Made by a program: the position numbers and the translations under genes. The notes beneath the pieces were generated by a model. The model worked only from the letters and a program-made list of their open reading frames with translations. It was not told where the DNA came from and ran no database searches. A stretch of 63,706 nucleotides of DNA, counting the filler, from Klebsormidium nitens (Eukaryota; Plantae; Klebsormidiophyceae), in NCBI GenBank assembly GCA_000708835.1. It is 9 parts of 9 records of this genome, joined end to end, with 100 filler letters (N's around TTAATTAATTAA, not from the genome) between each part and the next. Parts side by side here need not be neighbours in the genome. Positions count along the whole stretch, not along the records: positions 24,319 to 32,034 come from DF238334.1; 8 more parts are not named here. The stretch is one strand, 5' to 3'. Of this stretch, positions 24,319 to 32,134 are shown piece by piece; positions within the stretch are counted from its first letter, which is position 1; each line of letters begins with the position of its first letter.

Positions 24319-25018
24319 GCACTAGCATGGTACTGGCATGGCACTGACATGGCACATGGCACATGGCAGGAGCACGGCACAAGCATGGCAGGAGCATGGC
24401 AGGAGCATGGCACACGGCACTAGCATGGCAGAAGCATGGCACTAGCATGGCGCATAACACTAGCATGGCGCATGGCAGGAGCATGGCACATGGCACATGG
24501 CACTAGCATGGCACTAGCATGGCGCATGGCATGGCTTTGACATGGCACATGGCACATGGCAGGAACATGGCACTAGCATGGCAGGAGCATGGCACTGACA
24601 TGGCACATGGCAGGAGCATGGCACATGGCACATGGCACTAGCATGGCACTGGCATGGCACATGGCACATGGCACTGGCATGGCACTAGCATGGCAGGAGC
24701 ATGGCACGGCAGGAGCATGGCACTAGCATGGCAGGAGCATGGCAGGAGCATGGCACATGGCACTAGCATGGCAGGAGCATGGCACTAGCATGGCGCATGG
24801 CACTAGCATGGCAGGAGCATGGCACTAGCATGGCGCATGGCACTAGCATGGCGCATGGCAGTAGCATGGCACATGGCAGGAGCATGGCACATGGCACATG
24901 GCACCAGCATGGCACCAGCATGGCACTAGCATGGCTGGAGCATGGCACATGGCACATGGCACATGGCACCAGCATGGCACTAGCATGGCACGTGGCACAT
25001 GGCACATGGCACCAGCAT
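24319..25018. repeat. CATGGCA-based complex satellite (7-11 bp units: catggca, gcatggcagga, gcatggcacta)
   Basis: About 700 bp of shuffled GCATGGCA units, starting at a contig edge. Confidence 0.95.
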
Positions 25019-25290
25019 CCGAAAGTTCGAAAACGGGAAGACACAGGTTACCAAATCCTACGGAATGTATAAGTTCGAAACCGAGTTCGAATGCCAATCA
25101 GGAGGAGAGGGAGGGCATGGCGCTTGCGGATGATCACTTTGGTAGCCTTTCCTAAAAACTGCGAAGACGTTCACCATCCACAGTGCTGCCCAGGTACCTG
25201 GTGCAGCGCATGCTAGCTTGAGGATTTAAGGCACTGTCAGAAGTTTTCAAGGTCGTTGGGGAGTGGAGATTCCAAAACAATGTGCTCAAA

Positions 25291-25484
25291 CCTCCCTTGC
25301 ATTGTTCGATAGTTGTAACAAGCCGCAAGCATCTGTATTCTTATAAAATTCTGATTGTAAGCTGCTTTGAAAACGCTGCTTTAGCTGTTACTACTGTGTC
25401 TTGTGGACCTCCCCTGCATTGTTCAATGGTGTAACAAGGCTCACCCATGCATTGTTCAATAGTGTAACAAGCCGCAAGCATCTG
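25291..25484. repeat. Three imperfect direct repeats of about 30-45 bp (tgcattgttcaatagtgtaacaagccgcaagcatctg)
   Basis: Copies at about 25291-25335, 25408-25438 and 25448-25484. Confidence 0.75.
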
Positions 25485-26794
25485 CATTATTACCATTTGC
25501 TCTCAAATTGTTGTGACCCGAGACCCTAGTAACTCGTGACATTTTATTATAAGGAAGCTCAAACGCTTTGGTGGAGATGGCTAGGGTTCAAGGAGGAGTA
25601 CTGGCGTCCCGGTGAGCATTTGCTAACGCTCTGTTGCAGTTGGCTCGCCATTTGTAATTTCTATGCAGTAGGGTTTGCAACTTTACCATAAAGACAAGCC
25701 ATCCATACAAAAGGTTCTCTCTTCTGATGCAGGCTGATAGAGAAGTATGCATGTCTGTAAAATCGGGAGTCGAGGACATGCCATTTTCAGCAGAGATNNN
25801 NNNNNNNNNNNNNNNNNNNNNNNNNNNNNNNNNNNNNNNNNNNNNNNNNNNNNNNNNNNNNNNNNNNNNNNNNNNNNNNNNNNNNNNNNNNNNNNNNNNN
25901 NNNNNNNNNNNNNNNNNNNNNNNNNNNNNNNNNNNNNNNNNNNNNNNNNNNNNNNNNNNNNNNNNNNNNNNNNNNNNNNNNNNNNNNNNNNNNNNNNNNN
26001 NNNNNNNNNNNNNNNNNNNNNNNNNNNNNNNNNNNNNNNNNNNNNNNNNNNNNNNNNNNNNNNNNNNNNNNNNNNNNNNNNNNNNNNNNNNNNNNNNNNN
26101 NNNNNNNNNNNNNNNNNNNNNNNNNNNNNNNNNNNNNNNNNNNNNNNNNNNNNNNNNNNNNNNNNNNNNNNNNNNNNNNNNNNNNNNNNNNNNNNNNNNN
26201 NNNNNNNNNNNNNNNNNNNNNNNNNNNNNNNNNNNNNNNNNNNNNNNNNNNNNNNNNNNNNNNNNNNNNNNNNNNNNNNNNNNNNNNNNNNNNNNNNNNN
26301 NNNNNNNNNNNNNNNNNNNNNNNNNNNNNNNNNNNNNNNNNNNNNNNNNNNNNNNNNNNNNNNNNNNNNNNNNNNNNNNNNNNNNNNNNNNNNNNNNNNN
26401 NNNNNNNNNNNNNNNNNNNNNNNNNNNNNNNNNNNNNNNNNNNNNNNNNNNNNNNNNNNNNNNNNNNNNNNNNNNNNNNNNNNNNNNNNNNNNNNNNNNN
26501 NNNNNNNNNNNNNNNNNNNNNNNNNNNNNNNNNNNNNNNNNNNNNNNNNNNNNNNNNNNNNNNNNNNNNNNNNNNNNNNNNNNNNNNNNNNNNNNNNNNN
26601 NNNNNNNNNNNNNNNNNNNNNNNNNNNNNNNNNNNNNNNNNNNNNNNNNNNNNNNNNNNNNNNNNNNNNNNNNNNNNNNNNNNNNNNNNNNNNNNNNNNN
26701 NNNNNNNNNNNNNNNNNNNNNNNNNNNNNNNNNNNNNNNNNNNNNNNNNNNNNNNNNNNNNNNNNNNNNNNNNNNNNACACAAGGAAGGGCTCC

Positions 26795-27184
26795 ATGAAT
26801 CACACTGGTCCTAGTGCTGTTGTCCAAGAACACCTGTTTTCAGCGACTGAACAAGTTTACTCGATGGCCAACCTGGGATCAAAGAAGACAGGGCTGCCAA
26901 TGGTAGTCTGGGTGAGCCCCAAAAATGCACCTCACGGACCGCGTCTAAAAGTTTCACAACGCTATGGAGACAAAACCAGGGTAGGGGAGTGGTTCACTAT
27001 GACCCTAGAGGACAAGCCAAGGGTTATAGGGGAACTTGGGCAGATAAGACAGGAGGACGTTGAGCTAGTCGAAGGATTTATTAAAAAGAACAAGTTGCTA
27101 TTGTTAGCATACTGGGATCAGGACGAATATGTAGACACTTCAGACCTCATAGAGGGGCTCCAAAGAGTGGACAGTCAGTTGTAA
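26795..27184 (+). CDS. Small prokaryote/phage-like protein (conserved part likely starts at ATG 26864)
   Basis: MANLGSKKTGLPMVVWVSPKNAPHGPRLKVS...PRVIG...VEGFIKKNKLLLLAYWD resembles a MANL..TGLP..W...HGPRIKV family I recall from phage and bacterial hypothetical proteins. Intronless. Confidence 0.65.
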   Translation: MNHTGPSAVVQEHLFSATEQVYSMANLGSKKTGLPMVVWVSPKNAPHGPRLKVSQRYGDKTRVGEWFTMTLEDKPRVIGELGQIRQEDVELVEGFIKKNKLLLLAYWDQDEYVDTSDLIEGLQRVDSQL

Positions 27185-27797
27185 GGATAGAAAGCGGACA
27201 AGACTGAAATTGGGAAGATGTGATGAGGAGAGATGTGGATATATATCTAGACACTATATGCATCGAAAACCAGCCATACCAGAACAGCCTCATGTGCAGT
27301 ATCCAAGGGCAGCTCGAGATGTTCTTTTTGTGCAGAGGAGAGTCTAGATCTGATAACAGAAGGTCCAGTCACCCCGGTTTCCAAATTATCGTCCAGAGAG
27401 TGTATGTGGAATGTAGAATATGGAAAGGTGAAATTTGGAATGTAGAATGTAGAATCTCTGGATAGAAGCAATCGAAAAGTGCTGGCATGTCGCCCAGTTC
27501 TTCAACGTACCCCATATGGCGTCCAGCACCGCTCAGAGATTGACAAGTTGACGAGCATCTACGACAACAGGCACAATCCAACGATACGTGTCATGAAACC
27601 TAATAAGTACATACAAAGGGCATCGCGCTCCCCTACTTGGTTCCGATTCCGCGACCTTGCCATTGCCATTTCTAATGTCGCTGCATGGTCAGCAGACGCA
27701 CTGTCGCGGCTACTGCTGAGAGTCCGTCCATTAGGAAATTGCAAGTACAGTTAGAAATTACAATTTTTTTCCTGAGTGTATATCAGAACGCACATTC

Positions 27798-28766
27798 ATG
27801 GATCTCGTGGGAGTCAACTATGGCCGTCTTGCGTCCAATCCTCTCCCTCATGACGTAGCCATCCGAAAGATCAAGGATGTCGGTGCAAATGCAATCAAGC
27901 TCTTCGACAGCGACTCCGCTACTCTGGATGCATTGTTGAATTCGGGCCTCGTGGTCATGACTGCGATTCCAAACAGAGAATTGCACAAGTATGCTTACGA
28001 CCCAGCAGCTGCACCGGCATATGTGTCTTTCATCAAGCGATACATCGAAAGAAACGTGCTCATTCAATACGTGGCAGTTGGCAATGAAATCACGGCAAGC
28101 TGGTTCGGGGGTCAATTCGAGCCCCTCATCATGCCTGCTTTGATCAACATACAGAAAGCCTTGGATGCAGGCGGTCTCAGGAACAGGGTCAAGTTGGTGG
28201 TGCCACTCGATCTCTCCATCCTGTCAGTCTCATACCCACCCAGCGCAGGAGAGTTCCGTCCAGAGCTAACTGGTCTCATGAAGGACCTGCTCTACTTCTT
28301 CCGACATAACGGGGGCTGCCCGTTCGTCATCAACATCTACCCTCAGATAACCAAGATCGAGAACCCCGGCATACCGCTCGACTTCGTCCTGCTCGAGGGC
28401 CAGCAGCATGGTTACTGGGACGATGGAAAGTTTTACAAGAACCTGCTGGAGGCGCAATTGGACGCGGTGTATCATGCGATCCGCAAGGTGGGCTACGAAA
28501 CCGATAATCTGATGCTCGGCGAGATCGGCTTTGCGACCGGTGGGGCCGAGGTAGCCACCTTCGAGAACGCCAGACGCTTCCTCCGAAACTTTGTTAATCG
28601 GCGGCGAGACGGGACTCCCTTAATCAGGAAGAGTATCCCCGCCTTCCTCTTTGCCTTCATCGACGAGGACCTGAAGGACACCTGCGGAGGACGTACGGAA
28701 TACGAGAGACATTGGGGGATTCACCACGCGGACGGAAATCCTAAACACGGCATCAGGCTTTGCTGA
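27798..28766 (+). CDS. GH17 endo-beta-1,3-glucanase (plant-type), intronless, no signal peptide, no X8/GPI tail
   Basis: VGVNYG, IKLFD, YVAVGNE (acid/base Glu), PFVINIYP, Y.NLLEAQLDAVY.A, LGEIGFAT (nucleophile Glu), FLFAFIDEDLK, ERHWG. Confidence 0.95.
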   Translation: MDLVGVNYGRLASNPLPHDVAIRKIKDVGANAIKLFDSDSATLDALLNSGLVVMTAIPNRELHKYAYDPAAAPAYVSFIKRYIERNVLIQYVAVGNEITASWFGGQFEPLIMPALINIQKALDAGGLRNRVKLVVPLDLSILSVSYPPSAGEFRPELTGLMKDLLYFFRHNGGCPFVINIYPQITKIENPGIPLDFVLLEGQQHGYWDDGKFYKNLLEAQLDAVYHAIRKVGYETDNLMLGEIGFATGGAEVATFENARRFLRNFVNRRRDGTPLIRKSIPAFLFAFIDEDLKDTCGGRTEYERHWGIHHADGNPKHGIRLC

Positions 28767-28847
28767 TTCGCTGCCATCGTTGCGTCATTCTTCGACTTGG
28801 CTCCTTGAAGGTTGGCTTTTATTTTCCCAGTATATATTAGGCAATAC

Positions 28848-29777
28848 ATGCCTACAAACCCCGTCAGCAATGTAAAGCGTACGAGCTTATTCGCGGTTAC
28901 GTTGCTTGCGATCAGCACTTTTCTCTCAGCTTCGGAAACCGACATCTGCCCTCTGATAAAGAACGAGTATACCGGACGAGCGACCTACTACGGCGATGCC
29001 ACAGACAGTAACGTCGACTCTGGACACTGTGGCTTTCTCGGTCATTATGGAAAAGATGTCGCTGCGGTGTCCGAGGACCTGTGGGCGGACGGTCTCGCAT
29101 GTGGCGCTTGCTTCCAGTTAGAATGTATCAACAGCACTGCATGCCATGCGGGCGTGAAACGTACGGTTACCGTGACCGACAGTTGCATAGGCTGTGGAGG
29201 ATTTACGGACAAGGGCATCGAACCGGGTCAGCATTTCGATCTGAGCCGGACGGCGTTCACAGCCATCGCTGATGAAAGCGCCGGCTTTATCCAGGTGAAG
29301 GCTCGGAGGGTGGCATGCTCGGGTCTCTCGACCTCCGTGTACGTGCGGGGAACCGAATGGTGGTTGGAGGTCCGCTTCATGGGTCTGCCAGGAGAAGCAG
29401 GGAATGCGGAACACGTCACTATCACAGATCCTCAGGGGATAGTGAGGGACCTGGCAAAGAGTTGGGGCGGTGCGTTCGAGACGATCGGACAGAGACTGGA
29501 GGCCCCTCTGTCGTTGACCGTAGTGGATGGATTCAACAGCACGTGGTCGTTCCCAAATGCCATTCCTCGAGGGTGGACGAGCGACCGAGCTTTCGAGACT
29601 CAAACGGAAGCATCGCCGCGCGGGAGAGAGCTCTTTGCTGCAGGTGGGGTGGAGTGTGCGAAAAATGTTGCCTTTCAGGCTTCGGGACCCAGAGGGTCAG
29701 CCGAAAAGGCGATCGCACAAATGCTACAAGAAACCTCTTCTTTTGTATACGGTAGATGCAACTCCACGCATATGTGA
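28848..29777 (+). CDS. Expansin (DPBB/GH45-like domain + CBM63-like domain) with N-terminal hydrophobic segment and C-terminal extension, intronless
   Basis: ATYYG, GHCGF, CGACFQLEC, VTVTDSC, HFDLSRTAF, G.I.V..RRVAC; domain 2 WWLEV, SWGGAF, IPRGW. First ATG at 28848; hydrophobic SLFAVTLLAISTFLSA. Confidence 0.92.
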   Translation: MPTNPVSNVKRTSLFAVTLLAISTFLSASETDICPLIKNEYTGRATYYGDATDSNVDSGHCGFLGHYGKDVAAVSEDLWADGLACGACFQLECINSTACHAGVKRTVTVTDSCIGCGGFTDKGIEPGQHFDLSRTAFTAIADESAGFIQVKARRVACSGLSTSVYVRGTEWWLEVRFMGLPGEAGNAEHVTITDPQGIVRDLAKSWGGAFETIGQRLEAPLSLTVVDGFNSTWSFPNAIPRGWTSDRAFETQTEASPRGRELFAAGGVECAKNVAFQASGPRGSAEKAIAQMLQETSSFVYGRCNSTHM

Positions 29778-30436
29778 AGGCCTTGAAGAGAGGGGGTCGC
29801 TCGGCGGGGCTCTGTGTCTTTAGAAGGGACCCCCTGCGGTCAACGTGTGAAAAGCTGCACGAGACGACTAGAGCCATCATTTCGACTCACGAAAATCTCC
29901 TGCGACAGATCAAACTCCTTGAGAAGGAGACCAGCAAGCTTTTGAAACGAATACGTACTCTCATCCTCAGAGGGAGAGAGCTCGTCGAGCAGCGCGAGGA
30001 CTACAGGGTTCCGGAAGCCGAGAAAGAGAGAGAGATATTGAACGACTTTCGGGAATGCCACATGCCTTATCAAGCCGCACGAAACGCAAAATTCGAATGT
30101 TTGCAGTTGTCGAAAAAGATGTCGACGATATTTCTCGAGGTGGGAAAGCTTAAAGAGGATGTAAGGTACTTGAAGAAGAAAACGATGACAGGATTGCTAA
30201 CACCATTTTGCGAAGATCTATGCAAAGAGAATTCGATGCTTGGAATGATGTCATCGGGTGTCGAACGCATGTTGCAAGACTTTGACGTGCTCAAAAAGTG
30301 CGTAGAAAGTGCCACGTGCAAAGGTAGTTTGGCCAGAGCTCTCCTCACGTTTTCCAACCTCGGCTTCGAAAGAGCGATAGACAGGGTGCAAGAGAGACTG
30401 TATTTCCTTCGGTTGTGGCAGGCCAGCGAGAGCTAG
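29756..30436 (+). CDS. Hypothetical coiled-coil/helical protein
   Basis: 226-aa ORF rich in L/K/E/R heptads (LLRQIKLLEKETSKLLKRIRTL); overlaps the expansin stop by 22 nt. Confidence 0.6.
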   Translation: MQLHAYVKALKRGGRSAGLCVFRRDPLRSTCEKLHETTRAIISTHENLLRQIKLLEKETSKLLKRIRTLILRGRELVEQREDYRVPEAEKEREILNDFRECHMPYQAARNAKFECLQLSKKMSTIFLEVGKLKEDVRYLKKKTMTGLLTPFCEDLCKENSMLGMMSSGVERMLQDFDVLKKCVESATCKGSLARALLTFSNLGFERAIDRVQERLYFLRLWQASES

Positions 30437-30461
30437 TTTTTTTCTCCACAAACTGGTAAAG

Positions 30462-30794
30462 ATGGACGGCAGTTTTGCTTTGGGCTCTACGGGTGTCGAT
30501 GCGACGGGTGCTCCTCTTATAGTATCATCAGCTACGTCTCCTCCCAAGAAGCCCGTGAACAAGGGGCTCCTGGTGGTTAGCCTCATCGTCTGGGTTATAG
30601 GAGGTTTATATGCTGGTTACCTGTCGTGGAGATGCAACAGCAATCATGGGTTTAACACTTTTGTAAAGGTAGTGTCCGCACTCTTCTCCTTCCTAGGCAG
30701 TTGGAGCTACTGCCTCACCTACCTACTCTACAAGTCTTGGACGTGCGATCCGAAAGCCAGCATGTCGAGGCTGGACATCACTGGACACGCTTGA
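30462..30794 (+). CDS. Small two-TM membrane protein resembling nucleocytovirus small membrane proteins
   Basis: LLVVSLIVWVIGGLYAGYLSWRCN...VKVVSALFSFLGSWSYCLTYLLY. The AxYLSWxCN plus second-helix pattern is one I recall from giant-virus hypothetical proteins. Confidence 0.75.
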   Translation: MDGSFALGSTGVDATGAPLIVSSATSPPKKPVNKGLLVVSLIVWVIGGLYAGYLSWRCNSNHGFNTFVKVVSALFSFLGSWSYCLTYLLYKSWTCDPKASMSRLDITGHA

Positions 30795-30797
30795 TTC

Positions 30798-30814
30798 TCG
30801 GACGGACCGTCCGA
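30798..30814 (+). terminator. Palindrome immediately after the stop codon (possible viral 3'-end hairpin)
   Basis: tcggacgg-a-ccgtccga starts 4 nt after the TGA of 30462-30794 and is followed by aattttt. Confidence 0.35.
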
Positions 30815-30867
30815 AATTTTTCGTCTACTTAGGAGAGGGTTGCTTTCTCACGATCGTCATTCCAACG

Positions 30868-31998
30868 ATGGCGCCCAAGAAGAGCAGCGACTACGTCGTC
30901 CTCAGTCACACCGAGCACGTGCGTCTGAGACCGGACACATACTTGGGCCGGACCACTCCGGAGACGGCCACGCTCTATGTAGCGGACGGCCCCAGCAGCA
31001 TAAGGCTGCGTTCGGTGTCTGACTTCGTGCCCGGGCTCTACAAGATATTCGACGAGGTGCTGGTCAACTGCATCGACCAGTCCAAGGTAGACGACAGTCT
31101 CACCAAGATCAAGGTTTCCATAGACCAGGAAGCAGGAAAGGTTACTGTGTACAACGATGGAAGAGGCATTCCGGTAGAGAAGCATCCGAGCATGACGGAC
31201 TGCTTCACTCCCGAAGTGATATTTGGAGTCCTGCTGCCCGGTTCCAATTATGACGACAGCGTGGAGCGGGTGGTGGGTGGGCGCAACGGTCTGGGGGTCA
31301 AGCTCACGAATATCTTCTCCACACTGTTCGAATTGGAAGTGGTGGACTCGGAGAGGAGCCTAAAACTCACGCAAAAGTGGAACAAGATGCAGAGGAAAGG
31401 AGAACCAAAGGTGACCCGTCTGAGAGAGAATCACAAGACTGCGAGCTACGTGAAGGTGGCATTCGTCCCGGATTTGTCCTATTTCGGAGTGGAGAGGCTG
31501 AGCGATGCACTGGTGGCTTTCTTCCACAAGCGAGTTCTGGACGCCGCTGCTTGTACGCCCGAGAGGGTCGGCGTGTATCTGGACGGCAAGAAGGTCGGGG
31601 TGAAGTCCTTCAACGACTACGTTTCCATGTACATAGGAAGACCGTCCGAGTCTCCTCGTGTGGAGATCGATGCGGGACCTCGTTGGAAGGTCGTCCTGGC
31701 GAGAGCTCCAACGACGGAGGATGCAGAAGAGTATCGCAGCGGCGACCTGCAAGTATCCTTCGTCAATGGGGTGCTGACGGCTGGGGGAGGGACGCACGTG
31801 GAGCACGTGATGAGCCTCTTCTTGAAACAGGCACTCTCCCTCTTGGATGCCAAGGCAGGCAGTGGAGTGGCGGGCGCCCTCAGGAGTGCGCTTCTCCTCT
31901 TCGTAGACGCTACCCTGGTCAATCCGACCTTCGACAGCCAGACTAAAGTGAGGCGGCGTGCGGCAGGATCTCTTCTTCCTCCGACCCGAGCACTCTAG
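30868..31998 (+). CDS. TOP2: Type IIA DNA topoisomerase, N-terminal ATPase/transducer part, intronless over 1.08 kb; truncated
   Basis: EHVRLRPDTYLG, GLYKIFDEVLVN, NDGRGIPV..H, SNYDD, GGRNGLGVKLTNIFS, QVSFVNGVLT..GGTHV, NPTFDSQTK. Very short N-terminus; similarity stops after 31947. Confidence 0.92.
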   Translation: MAPKKSSDYVVLSHTEHVRLRPDTYLGRTTPETATLYVADGPSSIRLRSVSDFVPGLYKIFDEVLVNCIDQSKVDDSLTKIKVSIDQEAGKVTVYNDGRGIPVEKHPSMTDCFTPEVIFGVLLPGSNYDDSVERVVGGRNGLGVKLTNIFSTLFELEVVDSERSLKLTQKWNKMQRKGEPKVTRLRENHKTASYVKVAFVPDLSYFGVERLSDALVAFFHKRVLDAAACTPERVGVYLDGKKVGVKSFNDYVSMYIGRPSESPRVEIDAGPRWKVVLARAPTTEDAEEYRSGDLQVSFVNGVLTAGGGTHVEHVMSLFLKQALSLLDAKAGSGVAGALRSALLLFVDATLVNPTFDSQTKVRRRAAGSLLPPTRAL

Positions 31999-32134
31999 TC
32001 TGCCTTAGTACGTCGCAACGCGGGACGGTCATGANNNNNNNNNNNNNNNNNNNNNNNNNNNNNNNNNNNNNNNNNNNNTTAATTAATTAANNNNNNNNNN
32101 NNNNNNNNNNNNNNNNNNNNNNNNNNNNNNNNNN

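What the first reader, a model, noticed from the sequence alone, without database searches (positions are those of the whole stretch)
26778..32034. Candidate endogenous giant-virus segment carrying a plant cell-wall breaching module (GH17 glucanase + expansin next to a viral-style topoisomerase II)
Seen: five consecutive same-strand, intronless ORFs packed within 0-81 nt of each other, preceded by a phage-like ORF, while native genes in this window are split by many introns. Known: nucleocytoviruses encode compact TOP2 genes and small TM proteins; expansins loosen cellulose networks; GH17 enzymes degrade callose, the typical plant wound/defence plug. Inference: a giant virus of walled streptophyte algae captured two host-type wall-remodelling genes and placed them in tandem as an entry/exit or anti-callose kit, then integrated. 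I am not aware of such a paired viral module having been described, but I could not search.
Basis: partly seen in the sequence, partly recalled or inferred. Interest (0 to 1): 0.9.

Follow-up and report, generated by a model that had tools for sequence, protein, structure and literature searches.

The report
Giant-virus fragment in Klebsormidium scaffold
The piece is an entire 7.7-kb orphan scaffold of the alga Klebsormidium nitens that carries an intact fragment of a chlorovirus-like giant virus, including a callose-cutting enzyme and a wall-loosening expansin; such viral inserts, with expansins, were already reported in this genome, so only the glucanase partner and an intron-split viral topoisomerase are new details.

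Summary
Positions 27798-32034 carry five same-strand ORFs spaced -22 to 81 nt: GH17 glucanase, two-domain expansin, a 226-aa protein, a 110-aa membrane protein and the ATPase part of TOP2.

The piece is byte-identical to DF238334.1 of Klebsormidium nitens NIES-2285. Its only gene model, GAQ93247.1, is a chimera that fuses four of these ORFs.

The block is collinear at 73-78% DNA identity with a 56-kb SRA-assembled contig (L018), which also carries an A32-type packaging ATPase. More distant GH17-bearing contigs carry a PBCV-1-type minor capsid domain, dUTPase, dNMP kinase and a thaumatin. A contig found through the upstream ORF carries an intein-bearing RNR and a cyclin.

All five genes are whole, with dN/dS of 0.07-0.33. 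GH17 forms its own clade (100/100 bootstrap) at no more than 39% identity to plant enzymes. TOP2 groups with compact-length TOP2s, not cellular-length ones.

- TOP2 is not intronless. Exon 1 ends at a GT site shared with L018.
- The upstream ORF is a lineage orphan, not phage-like.
- GH17-expansin adjacency holds only in one sublineage.
- Integration is not shown on this scaffold.
- Viral expansins in this genome, with the same wall-crossing hypothesis, were published in 2017.

Verdict: a real but largely known kind, and GH17 is a new addition.

The parts
24319..25011 (.). Degenerate satellite built on CATGGCA units (periods 7/11/18/29), at the 5' end of the scaffold
   Evidence: Tandem Repeats Finder. 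The motif is absent from all 27 other loci fetched. Whether it is host or viral cannot be told.
25012..25797 (.). Unique non-coding DNA with 33-nt direct repeats (25294-25476). The last 246 nt (25551-25796) are homologous to metagenome contig L022.
   Evidence: the repeat finder. blastn gives 86.6% identity to L022 9692-9937.
25798..26777 (.). Scaffold gap of 980 N inside DF238334.1
   Evidence: In L022 the two flanks are only 46 nt apart, so the gap is probably over-sized or hides an insertion.
26795..27184 (+). 129-aa orphan ORF (frame open from the gap edge at 26780). Lineage-specific protein of unknown function, not phage-like.
   Evidence: No Pfam, PHROG or NCBIfam hit. Relatives are P0069 (91%, L022) and P0070 (67%, L023, beside an intein-bearing RNR, RNase III and a cyclin). 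The AlphaFold model was unusable, pLDDT 40.
27185..27797 (.). 613-nt spacer without a conserved ORF. It marks the boundary between the L022-like block and the L018/L021-like block, and may hold a relic of a small gene.
   Evidence: blastn collinearity stops at 27185 and resumes at 27764. There is a 22-aa similarity to the end of a 118-aa ORF of L023. No Rfam or tRNA hit.
27798..28766 (+). GH17 beta-1,3-glucanase, 322 aa, catalytic domain only: no signal peptide and no X8/CBM43 domain
   Evidence: Pfam PF00332 at 1.5e-52. Matches plant GH17 structures 4hpg and 2cyg at 1e-45 and 1e-41, with both catalytic Glu motifs aligned. Forms its own clade with 10 metagenome proteins, 100/100 NJ bootstrap. 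dN/dS is 0.07-0.12.
28848..29777 (+). Expansin-like protein, 309 aa: signal-peptide-like N-terminus, DPBB domain 1 with HFD motif, CBM63-like domain 2, and a ~50-aa C-terminal tail
   Evidence: Pfam DPBB_1 at 3e-15; Expansin_C at 18 bits, below the cut-off. phmmer to beta-expansins covers both domains. AF2 model plus Foldseek: Phl p 1 at 9e-14 (TMt 0.70), EXPB1 and bacterial EXLX1. Conserved Cys and HFD. dN/dS is 0.14.
29756..30436 (+). 226-aa protein of unknown function, probably coiled coil. It overlaps the expansin stop by 22 nt.
   Evidence: Only sub-threshold Pfam hits. Conserved in L018 (65%) and L025 (48%) at the same position. dN/dS is 0.19.
30462..30794 (+). 110-aa small membrane protein with one strong hydrophobic span (residues 31-56)
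   Evidence: Hydropathy. Homologues in L018, L025 and L020. dN/dS is 0.33.
30868..31946 (+). TOP2 exon 1: GHKL ATPase and transducer domains, 359 codons, ending ...NPTFDSQTK
   Evidence: PDB TOP2 ATPase domains at 4e-66. Pfam HATPase_c and DNA_gyraseB. 90% aa identity to L018 exon 1 with dN/dS 0.07. NJ placement among compact-length TOP2s.
31947..32034 (+). 5' part of TOP2 intron 1 (starts GTGAGG), cut by the scaffold end. The apparent stop at 31996-31998 lies inside it.
   Evidence: L018 has a GT..AG intron of about 200 nt at the same codon. TOP2 coding then resumes, and the rest of the enzyme follows in four more segments.

Best explanation
DF238334.1 is a fragment of the genome of a phycodnavirus-like (chlorovirus/Algavirales-related) giant virus associated with Klebsormidium. 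It is most probably one of the many viral inserts already known in the K. nitens NIES-2285 nuclear genome.

The fragment carries an intact block of five genes kept under purifying selection. Two of them were taken long ago from the streptophyte lineage.
- The GH17 endo-beta-1,3-glucanase is reduced to its catalytic domain and has no signal peptide.
- The two-domain expansin has a signal peptide.

Inferred mechanism: the virus uses them on the host wall, which in Klebsormidium is unusually rich in callose. The expansin is exported through the host secretory path and loosens the cellulose network. The glucanase reaches the wall either packaged in the virion (entry) or on loss of cell integrity (exit), and cuts the beta-1,3-glucan.

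The neighbouring TOP2 is a viral replication enzyme. Its gene is split by spliceosomal-type introns, which implies transcription and splicing in the host nucleus, as in other latent or endogenous algal giant viruses.

Shown here: source identity, domain identities, synteny, selection, clade structure and the shared intron site. Inferred: integration, the routes by which the two proteins reach the wall, the timing of their action, and wall breaching itself.
For: Source: the piece equals DF238334.1, and GAQ93247.1 is a chimera of four ORFs.

Viral nature:
- Positions 27798-32034 are collinear with L018 at 73-78% nt identity.
- L018 has an A32 packaging ATPase 1.4 kb upstream of its GH17, scoring 28.8 bits against a cut-off of 22.8.
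- Other GH17 contigs carry a PBCV-1 minor capsid P8 domain, dNMP kinase, dUTPase, SET and a DNA methylase. L023, found through the upstream ORF, carries an intein-bearing RNR and a cyclin.
- The literature assigns K. flaccidum/nitens NCLDV core genes to Phycodnaviridae and reports viral expansins and a U-type cyclin (PMC5294986).
- The viral gene fraction of K. nitens is methylation-enriched (PMC12344493).

Integrity: no internal stops, and dN/dS is 0.07-0.33 with dS of 0.85-1.9 against L018.

Gene origin:
- The GH17 clade has 100/100 support and is at most 39% identical to plant GH17.
- The expansin is at most 32% identical to plant expansins.
- Both keep catalytic or signature motifs and folds.

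TOP2:
- Its nearest neighbours are compact-length TOP2s in 99 of 100 replicates.
- The intron site is shared with L018.

Host wall: callose is abundant in Klebsormidium cross and terminal walls (PMC4650865).

Precedents: chloroviruses carry wall-degrading enzymes, including one packaged in the virion (PMC8145301). Spliceosomal introns are known in endogenous giant viruses (PMC9693826 and preprint 10.64898/2026.10.09.758095).
Against: - The 7.7-kb scaffold has no hallmark gene (MCP, PolB, A32, VLTF3, D5) and no host gene or junction.
- The comparator contigs are unnamed SRA or metagenome assemblies. Some may themselves be inserts in Klebsormidium-like algae: L022 has TTTTAGGG arrays and a plant-type LRR gene, and L025 has frame-broken genes.
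- IMG/VR holds no relative of this GH17 or expansin.
- No expression, splicing or enzymatic data exist for these genes.
- GH17-expansin adjacency is not conserved across the lineage, so a functional pairing is not demonstrated.
- The TOP2 tree is NJ on one domain, and protein length stands in for viral versus cellular origin.
Confidence: 0.8

Rival explanations
1. The scaffold is DNA of a free or episomal giant virus present in the sequenced K. nitens culture. It would then be a contaminant or persistent infection, not an integrated element.
For: All five genes are intact and under purifying selection. The scaffold is a short orphan with no host gene. For K. flaccidum NCLDV contigs, only one showed an apparent junction with host DNA (PMC5294986).
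Against: The same paper found several divergent copies of core genes (DNA polymerases 40-92% identical) with rearranged order, and argued for insertions. The viral gene fraction of K. nitens is enriched in host-type repressive methylation (PMC12344493). The scaffold starts with about 700 bp of satellite and is joined across a gap to non-coding DNA.
Confidence: 0.2
2. GH17 and the expansin are not an entry/exit kit. They would remodel the wall of the living infected or latently infected filament. Examples are removing callose deposited as a stress or defence response, or weakening callose-rich terminal walls so that infected filaments fragment and disperse.
For: Callose rises within 30 minutes of stress and is abundant in terminal walls, where it may aid cell detachment (PMC4650865). 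The expansin has a secretion signal, which suits action from a living cell. A related contig also carries a thaumatin, a glucan-binding PR-5-type protein. TOP2 introns suggest a nuclear and possibly latent lifestyle.
Against: GH17 lacks a signal peptide in every member of the clade with an unambiguous start. That argues against secretion from an intact cell. There are no expression data.
Confidence: 0.25
3. The block is a set of host (Klebsormidium) genes, either native or domesticated from a virus and now serving the alga. It would not be part of a viral genome.
For: The genes are intact and under purifying selection. TOP2 has spliceosomal-type introns. GH17 and the expansin are plant-type families.
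Against: Spacing is compact and includes an overlap, and the deposited gene model had to fuse four ORFs. The block is syntenic with a contig bearing a packaging ATPase. There are no K. nitens paralogues among the GH17 or expansin hits, and identity to any plant protein is at most 39%. TOP2 lies among compact-length forms. The block, or GH17 alone, recurs in several divergent viral-type contigs.
Confidence: 0.05

Closest known systems
NCLDV-like (Phycodnaviridae-type) contigs of the Klebsormidium flaccidum/nitens NIES-2285 assembly, with viral expansin genes on DF237168.1 and DF237869.1 (Gallot-Lavallee & Blanc 2017, PMC5294986)
   Same: Same genome assembly. Same kind of small, virus-dominated scaffold. 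A plant-like expansin sits among viral genes, with the same proposed role of crossing the host wall. A U-type cyclin is also seen in a related contig here (L023).
   Different: DF238334.1 is not among the contigs cited there. Their screen was anchored on core genes, and this scaffold has none. Their expansins are flanked by VLTF3 and a phycodnavirus-only gene, whereas this one is flanked by GH17 and the ORF226-TM-TOP2 block. That paper mentions neither glucanase nor topoisomerase. I could not fetch those two contigs to compare the expansins directly.
Chlorovirus (PBCV-1) cell-wall-degrading enzymes: the beta-1,3-glucanase and the chitinase, chitosanase and lyase set, and the virion-packaged A561L wall-digesting domain (PMC8145301, PMC7019647, PMC5408694)
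   Same: A large algal DNA virus must breach a rigid wall for entry and release. It carries host-wall-matched glycoside hydrolases, some without secretion signals and one packaged in the particle.
   Different: From my own knowledge, the chlorovirus glucanase belongs to a different family (GH16), and no chlorovirus expansin is known. Here the enzymes are of plant type (GH17, expansin) and match a callose- and cellulose-containing streptophyte wall. A full-text search for Nucleocytoviricota plus GH17 found no paper.
Microbial expansins (EXLX1 of Bacillus, Clavibacter, Xanthomonas and fungi) acquired from plants by horizontal transfer
   Same: The same two-domain fold (Foldseek TMt 0.65-0.70). 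A plant-derived wall-loosening protein used by a parasite of walled hosts.
   Different: By sequence the viral protein is closer to plant beta-expansins and group-1 allergens. It has an extra C-terminal tail of about 50 aa that is conserved in L018.
Intron-bearing endogenous or latent giant viruses of green algae (Chlamydomonas GEVEs and punuivirus; PMC9693826, preprint 10.64898/2026.10.09.758095)
   Same: Canonical GT..AG introns occur in a subset of viral genes, next to intronless, tightly packed neighbours.
   Different: The host here is a streptophyte and the viral lineage differs. The intron-bearing gene is TOP2 (four introns in L018). Splicing is inferred from sequence only.

Membership tests
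Nucleocytoviricota-derived (giant endogenous) viral element | Hallmark genes (MCP, PolB, A32 ATPase, VLTF3, D5) on the same contig | tested here: not met
   None on the 7.7-kb scaffold. The feature is met only indirectly. Syntenic L018 has an A32-type ATPase above the Pfam cut-off, and L020 and L026 have the PBCV-1 minor capsid P8 domain.
Nucleocytoviricota-derived (giant endogenous) viral element | Collinearity with a longer virus-type genome fragment | tested here: met
   27798-32034 is collinear with L018 10001-14923 at 73-78% nt identity. The GH17-to-expansin junction is also present in L021.
Nucleocytoviricota-derived (giant endogenous) viral element | Dense, mostly intronless gene packing that differs from host gene structure | tested here: met
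   Spacings are -22 to 81 nt. The eukaryotic gene model fused four ORFs. TOP2 is the exception, with an intron.
Nucleocytoviricota-derived (giant endogenous) viral element | Junction with host chromosomal DNA (needed for 'endogenous') | tested here: inconclusive
   There is no host gene on the scaffold. The 5' satellite and non-coding DNA are of unknown origin. The literature supports insertion for the genome as a whole, not for this scaffold.
Glycoside hydrolase family 17 | Full-length match to the GH17 profile above the curated threshold | tested here: met
   PF00332 at 179.5 bits against a cut-off of 28.2, covering profile positions 1-304 of 306.
Glycoside hydrolase family 17 | Two catalytic glutamates (acid/base in the GNE motif; nucleophile in the E-x-G motif) | tested here: met
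   Both motifs align with those of Hevea (4hpg) and banana (2cyg) glucanases. The assignment of the residues' roles comes from my own knowledge of the family.
Glycoside hydrolase family 17 | Endo-beta-1,3-glucanase activity | not testable with these tools
   Sequence only. Some GH17 members are lichenases or transglycosylases.
Expansin superfamily | Domain 1: six-stranded double-psi beta-barrel with conserved Cys and HFD motif | tested here: met
   DPBB_1 at 56.6 bits against a cut-off of 28.8. Cys and H129-F130 are invariant across viral and plant sequences.
Expansin superfamily | Domain 2: CBM63-type beta-sandwich following domain 1 | tested here: met
   Pfam Expansin_C is below threshold (18 against 24.6 bits). 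However, phmmer to beta-expansins spans both domains. The AF2 model matches whole expansins at TMt 0.64-0.70 and the single-domain Phl p 2/3 at TMt 0.76. Model confidence is moderate, pLDDT 61 overall and 70-89 in the domains.
Expansin superfamily | N-terminal secretion signal | tested here: inconclusive
   A basic n-region is followed by a 14-residue hydrophobic stretch and SAS|E, conserved in relatives. No dedicated signal-peptide predictor was available.
Eukaryote/NCLDV-type topoisomerase IIA | GHKL ATPase plus transducer domain | tested here: met
   PDB TOP2 ATPase domains at 4e-66 over residues 13-362. Pfam HATPase_c and DNA_gyraseB.
Eukaryote/NCLDV-type topoisomerase IIA | Toprim and breakage-reunion (GyrA-like) domains in the same gene | tested here: inconclusive
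   The scaffold ends in intron 1. In syntenic L018 the remaining domains follow in four further segments that cover a complete IMG/VR TOP2 query.

The most novel reading that the evidence does not exclude
The K. nitens copy is not a relic. It would be part of a still-coherent latent giant virus of a streptophyte alga. The lineage would have assembled a plant 'PR-protein-like' wall arsenal (GH17 as PR-2, thaumatin as PR-5, and an expansin) turned against the host wall. Its replication genes, such as TOP2, would have acquired host-type introns for nuclear expression during latency. That would make it the first temperate giant-virus system in the algal lineage leading to land plants.
Probability: 0.2. 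Interest if true: 0.75.

Novelty: new member of a known kind. Interest (0 to 1): 0.45.

Why it matters
It corrects a public annotation: GAQ93247.1, named 'DNA topoisomerase ii', is a fusion of four viral genes. It adds a GH17 callose-type glucanase to the known repertoire of giant-virus wall enzymes, and possibly a thaumatin in a relative. It shows that the Klebsormidium-associated viruses form a small environmental lineage with conserved gene blocks.

The fit between a callose-rich host wall and a virus-borne beta-1,3-glucanase is a clear example of host-matched auxiliary genes in a relative of land plants. The conserved introns in a core replication gene add a streptophyte case to the emerging picture of nucleus-dependent, possibly latent, algal giant viruses.

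Tried and rejected
Searches that gave nothing or little:
- An exact look-up of the window's GH17 gave nothing, because the only deposited model is the chimera.
- IMG/VR scans with GH17, with the expansin and with the GH17 alignment found no relative.
- The single JGI metagenome-contig scan gave only a 28% distant hit.
- PHROGs and NCBIfam gave nothing for the small ORFs.
- AlphaFold on the 129-aa ORF with 3 sequences failed (pLDDT 40), so no fold search was run on it.
- Rfam and tRNA scans were empty.
- De novo 6-mer enrichment upstream of ORFs found no strong shared promoter word. The GTATA enrichment is post hoc and confined to the window/L018 sublineage.
- Naming the TOP2 neighbours mostly failed, because nearly all are unnamed metagenome proteins. 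Protein length was therefore used as a proxy.
- SRA and JGI sample identifiers were not found in any paper, so the biological source of the comparator contigs is unknown.

Readings rejected:
- Recent retrocopy of host genes: identity to any plant protein found is at most 39%.
- Phage origin of the upstream ORF.
- TOP2 as a naturally short, ATPase-only protein: downstream exons exist in L018.

Slip: searches printed tblastn segment coordinates for relative L025. The places of its frame discontinuities could be read from them. I did not repeat or use them, and nothing was deleted.

Full report
WHAT IS THERE

The finding's piece (24319-32034) has three parts:
- 24319-25797: a degenerate CATGGCA-based satellite followed by about 0.8 kb of unique non-coding DNA.
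- 25798-26777: a run of 980 N.

On the + strand of that segment lie:
- a 129-aa ORF, 26795-27184, with its frame open from the gap edge;
- a 613-nt stretch with no conserved ORF;
- five ORFs spaced -22 to 81 nt: 27798-28766, 28848-29777 (ATG; a TTG lies at 28812), 29756-30436, 30462-30794, and 30868 onward.

Family searches identify three of the five:
- GH17, Pfam 1.5e-52. Plant glucanase structures match at 1e-45 and both catalytic Glu motifs align.
- An expansin, DPBB_1 at 3e-15. Beta-expansin structures match over both domains and the HFD motif is kept.
- The GHKL-plus-transducer part of topoisomerase II, PDB 4e-66.

An AlphaFold model of the expansin was built from a 7-sequence alignment and had moderate confidence. 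It matches whole plant and bacterial expansins at TM 0.64-0.70.

GH17 starts directly at the catalytic domain and has no signal peptide. The expansin has a signal-like N-terminus and a C-terminal tail of about 50 aa. The 110-aa protein has one strong membrane span. No function could be assigned to the 226-aa or the 129-aa protein.

WHERE IT COMES FROM

A whole-library search with TOP2 exon 1 returned a 90%-identical cluster. One member of that cluster is GAQ93247.1, 'DNA topoisomerase ii [Klebsormidium nitens]', on a 7,716-bp contig. That contig, DF238334.1 of assembly GCA_000708835.1, is byte-identical to the piece. The 1,025-aa model maps at 97-100% onto parts of GH17, the expansin, ORF226 and TOP2. 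It is therefore an annotation chimera.

IS IT VIRAL?

The GH17 search gave ten close relatives (55-88% identity, nearly all 320-327 aa) that occur only in metagenome or SRA assemblies. Land-plant GH17s follow at 39% or less. The clade is monophyletic in 100 of 100 NJ bootstraps.

The contexts of these relatives are virus-like:
- L018 (56 kb) repeats the window's order: GH17, expansin, 226 aa, 109 aa, TOP2. DNA identity is 73-78%. It also has an A32-type packaging ATPase above the Pfam cut-off and a GIY-YIG gene just upstream, and one extra 0.6-kb gene between GH17 and the expansin.
- L021 shows GH17 running straight into the expansin, as in the window.
- L016, L017, L019, L020 and L026 place GH17 elsewhere, beside a dNMP kinase or a laminin-G gene. 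Their other genes include kinases, SET, dUTPase, a DNA methylase, a lipase, the PBCV-1 minor-capsid P8 domain and a thaumatin.
- L025 keeps expansin-226-TM-TOP2 without GH17. In that copy the expansin, the TM gene and TOP2 exon 1 each show one frame discontinuity, while ORF226 is whole.

The upstream 129-aa ORF has relatives only on L022 (91%) and L023 (67%). On L023 it lies next to an intein-bearing RNR, RNase III and a PF08613 cyclin.

This matches the literature. Gallot-Lavallee & Blanc 2017 described phycodnavirus-type NCLDV contigs in this same assembly. They reported two expansin genes, a U-type cyclin, several divergent copies of core genes, and an apparent host junction in only one contig. 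They proposed that the expansin helps the virus cross the wall (PMC5294986). DF238334.1, glucanase and topoisomerase are not mentioned there. Viral-origin genes of K. nitens are enriched in repressive methylation (PMC12344493).

STATE OF THE GENES

None of the five window genes has an internal stop. Against L018, dN/dS is as follows, with dS of 0.85-1.9:

| Gene | dN/dS |
|---|---|
| GH17 | 0.09 |
| Expansin | 0.14 |
| ORF226 | 0.19 |
| TM110 | 0.33 |
| TOP2 exon 1 | 0.07 |

Nearly all of the divergence therefore accrued under selection for function.

TOP2

IMG/VR viral TOP2s are uninterrupted ORFs of about 1,075 aa, only 35-39% identical to the window's.

In L018 a complete TOP2 is present as five coding segments separated by four GT..AG intervals. 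The first interval begins right after ...NPTFDSQTK. At the same codon the window's sequence turns into GTGAGG. The scaffold ends 88 nt later, inside this intron.

I tested the splice model segment by segment only and did not join the exons.

An NJ tree of the ATPase domain used 152 sequences for the full tree and 69 for the bootstrap. It puts the window, L018 and L016 together at 100%. In 99 of 100 replicates their closest neighbours are compact-length (about 1,000-1,150 aa) or fragmentary metagenomic TOP2s, never cellular-length ones. Deeper nodes are unsupported.

Introns in endogenous or latent algal giant viruses are documented (PMC9693826; preprint 10.64898/2026.10.09.758095).

HOW IT MOST LIKELY WORKS

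Klebsormidium walls are rich in callose, especially the cross and terminal walls (PMC4650865). A virus of such a host needs to open a wall of cellulose and beta-1,3-glucan.

The inferred scheme has two routes:
- The expansin is secreted and loosens the wall.
- The signal-less GH17 acts either from the virion at entry or at cell breakdown.

Chloroviruses offer the closest precedent. They carry a set of wall hydrolases, and one wall-digesting protein is packaged in the particle (PMC8145301).

GH17, the expansin and ORF226 share a GTATA word 10-25 nt upstream of the ATG, while TOP2 and the TM gene do not. The word is enriched in L018 (6 of 18 genes) against 1.5% in random 40-mers. This is a post hoc hint of shared regulation, not proof.

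WHAT IS NOT SHOWN

- Integration of this scaffold is not shown. It carries no host gene.
- It is not known whether the comparator contigs are free viruses or inserts in related algae. L022 carries TTTTAGGG arrays and a plant-type LRR gene.
- There is no evidence on expression, splicing or enzymatic activity.
- The GH17-expansin pairing is a feature of one sublineage, not of the family.

VERDICT

This is a genuine giant-virus fragment of a kind already reported in this genome, including the expansin idea. The new elements are a virus-borne GH17, the conserved expansin-to-TOP2 block, the intron-split TOP2 and the corrected annotation.

SLIP

Searches printed alignment-segment coordinates for L025 that reveal where its frame discontinuities lie.

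Noticed in passing
window 27798-31998 (= DF238334.1 3480-7680): The only deposited gene model, GAQ93247.1 'DNA topoisomerase ii' (1025 aa), is a chimera. It splices together parts of GH17, the expansin, ORF226 and TOP2 exon 1, plus read-through into intron 1.
   Followed up: yes
window 25551-25796 and 26778-27185; L022 9692-10391: Metagenome contig L022 matches the scaffold on both sides of the 980-N gap (87% and 94% identity). Only 46 nt separate the two matches in L022. The gap is therefore probably over-sized, or the K. nitens copy holds an insertion there.
   Followed up: partly
L022 3132-3180 and 4799-4821: Two same-orientation arrays of TTTTAGGG/TTTTAGG, a green-algal telomere-like repeat, bracket a 1.6-kb stretch. 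The contig also encodes a plant-type LRR protein. L022 may be nuclear DNA of a Klebsormidium-like alga rather than a free virus.
   Followed up: no
L026 2476-3108: A thaumatin-family gene (PF00314, 1e-36) lies 7 kb from the GH17 gene of a related contig. This is a second PR-protein-like gene in the lineage.
   Followed up: no
L018 13754-18913: The complete TOP2 is split into five segments by four GT..AG introns. The second intron, about 1.1 kb, contains a 351-aa antisense ORF with no Pfam or NCBIfam match.
   Followed up: partly
L016 16409-17785; L027 10001-11011: In more distant relatives only the ATPase part of TOP2 is found within the fetched 10-kb flanks. In L016 the ORF runs about 100 codons past the point where L018 and the window have intron 1. 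The rest of the enzyme is either far away, behind a long intron, or lost.
   Followed up: no
L025 7266-13518: This copy of the expansin-ORF226-TM-TOP2 block is decaying. The expansin, the TM gene and TOP2 exon 1 each show one frame discontinuity, while ORF226 is whole. The 7 kb upstream has almost no ORFs. It looks like an older insert.
   Followed up: partly
window 27758-27797, 28808-28847, 29716-29755; L018 upstream regions: A GTATA word lies 10-25 nt upstream of the ATG of GH17, the expansin and ORF226, and of 6 of 18 L018 genes. It is nearly absent upstream of genes in L016, L019, L020 and L026. It is a candidate sublineage promoter element, found post hoc.
   Followed up: partly
window 27334-27400: A 22-aa stretch in the 613-nt spacer resembles the end of a 118-aa ORF of L023. 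It may be a relic of a lost gene at the boundary between two syntenic blocks.
   Followed up: no
window 24319-25011: About 700 bp of degenerate CATGGCA-based satellite lies at the scaffold end. It is not found in any of the related contigs, and its origin, host or viral terminal repeat, is unknown.
   Followed up: partly
L023 10593-14744 and 16587-17354: An RNR large subunit with an intein lies beside PF08613 (U-type) cyclin genes. This echoes the cyclin reported for K. flaccidum NCLDV contigs.
   Followed up: no
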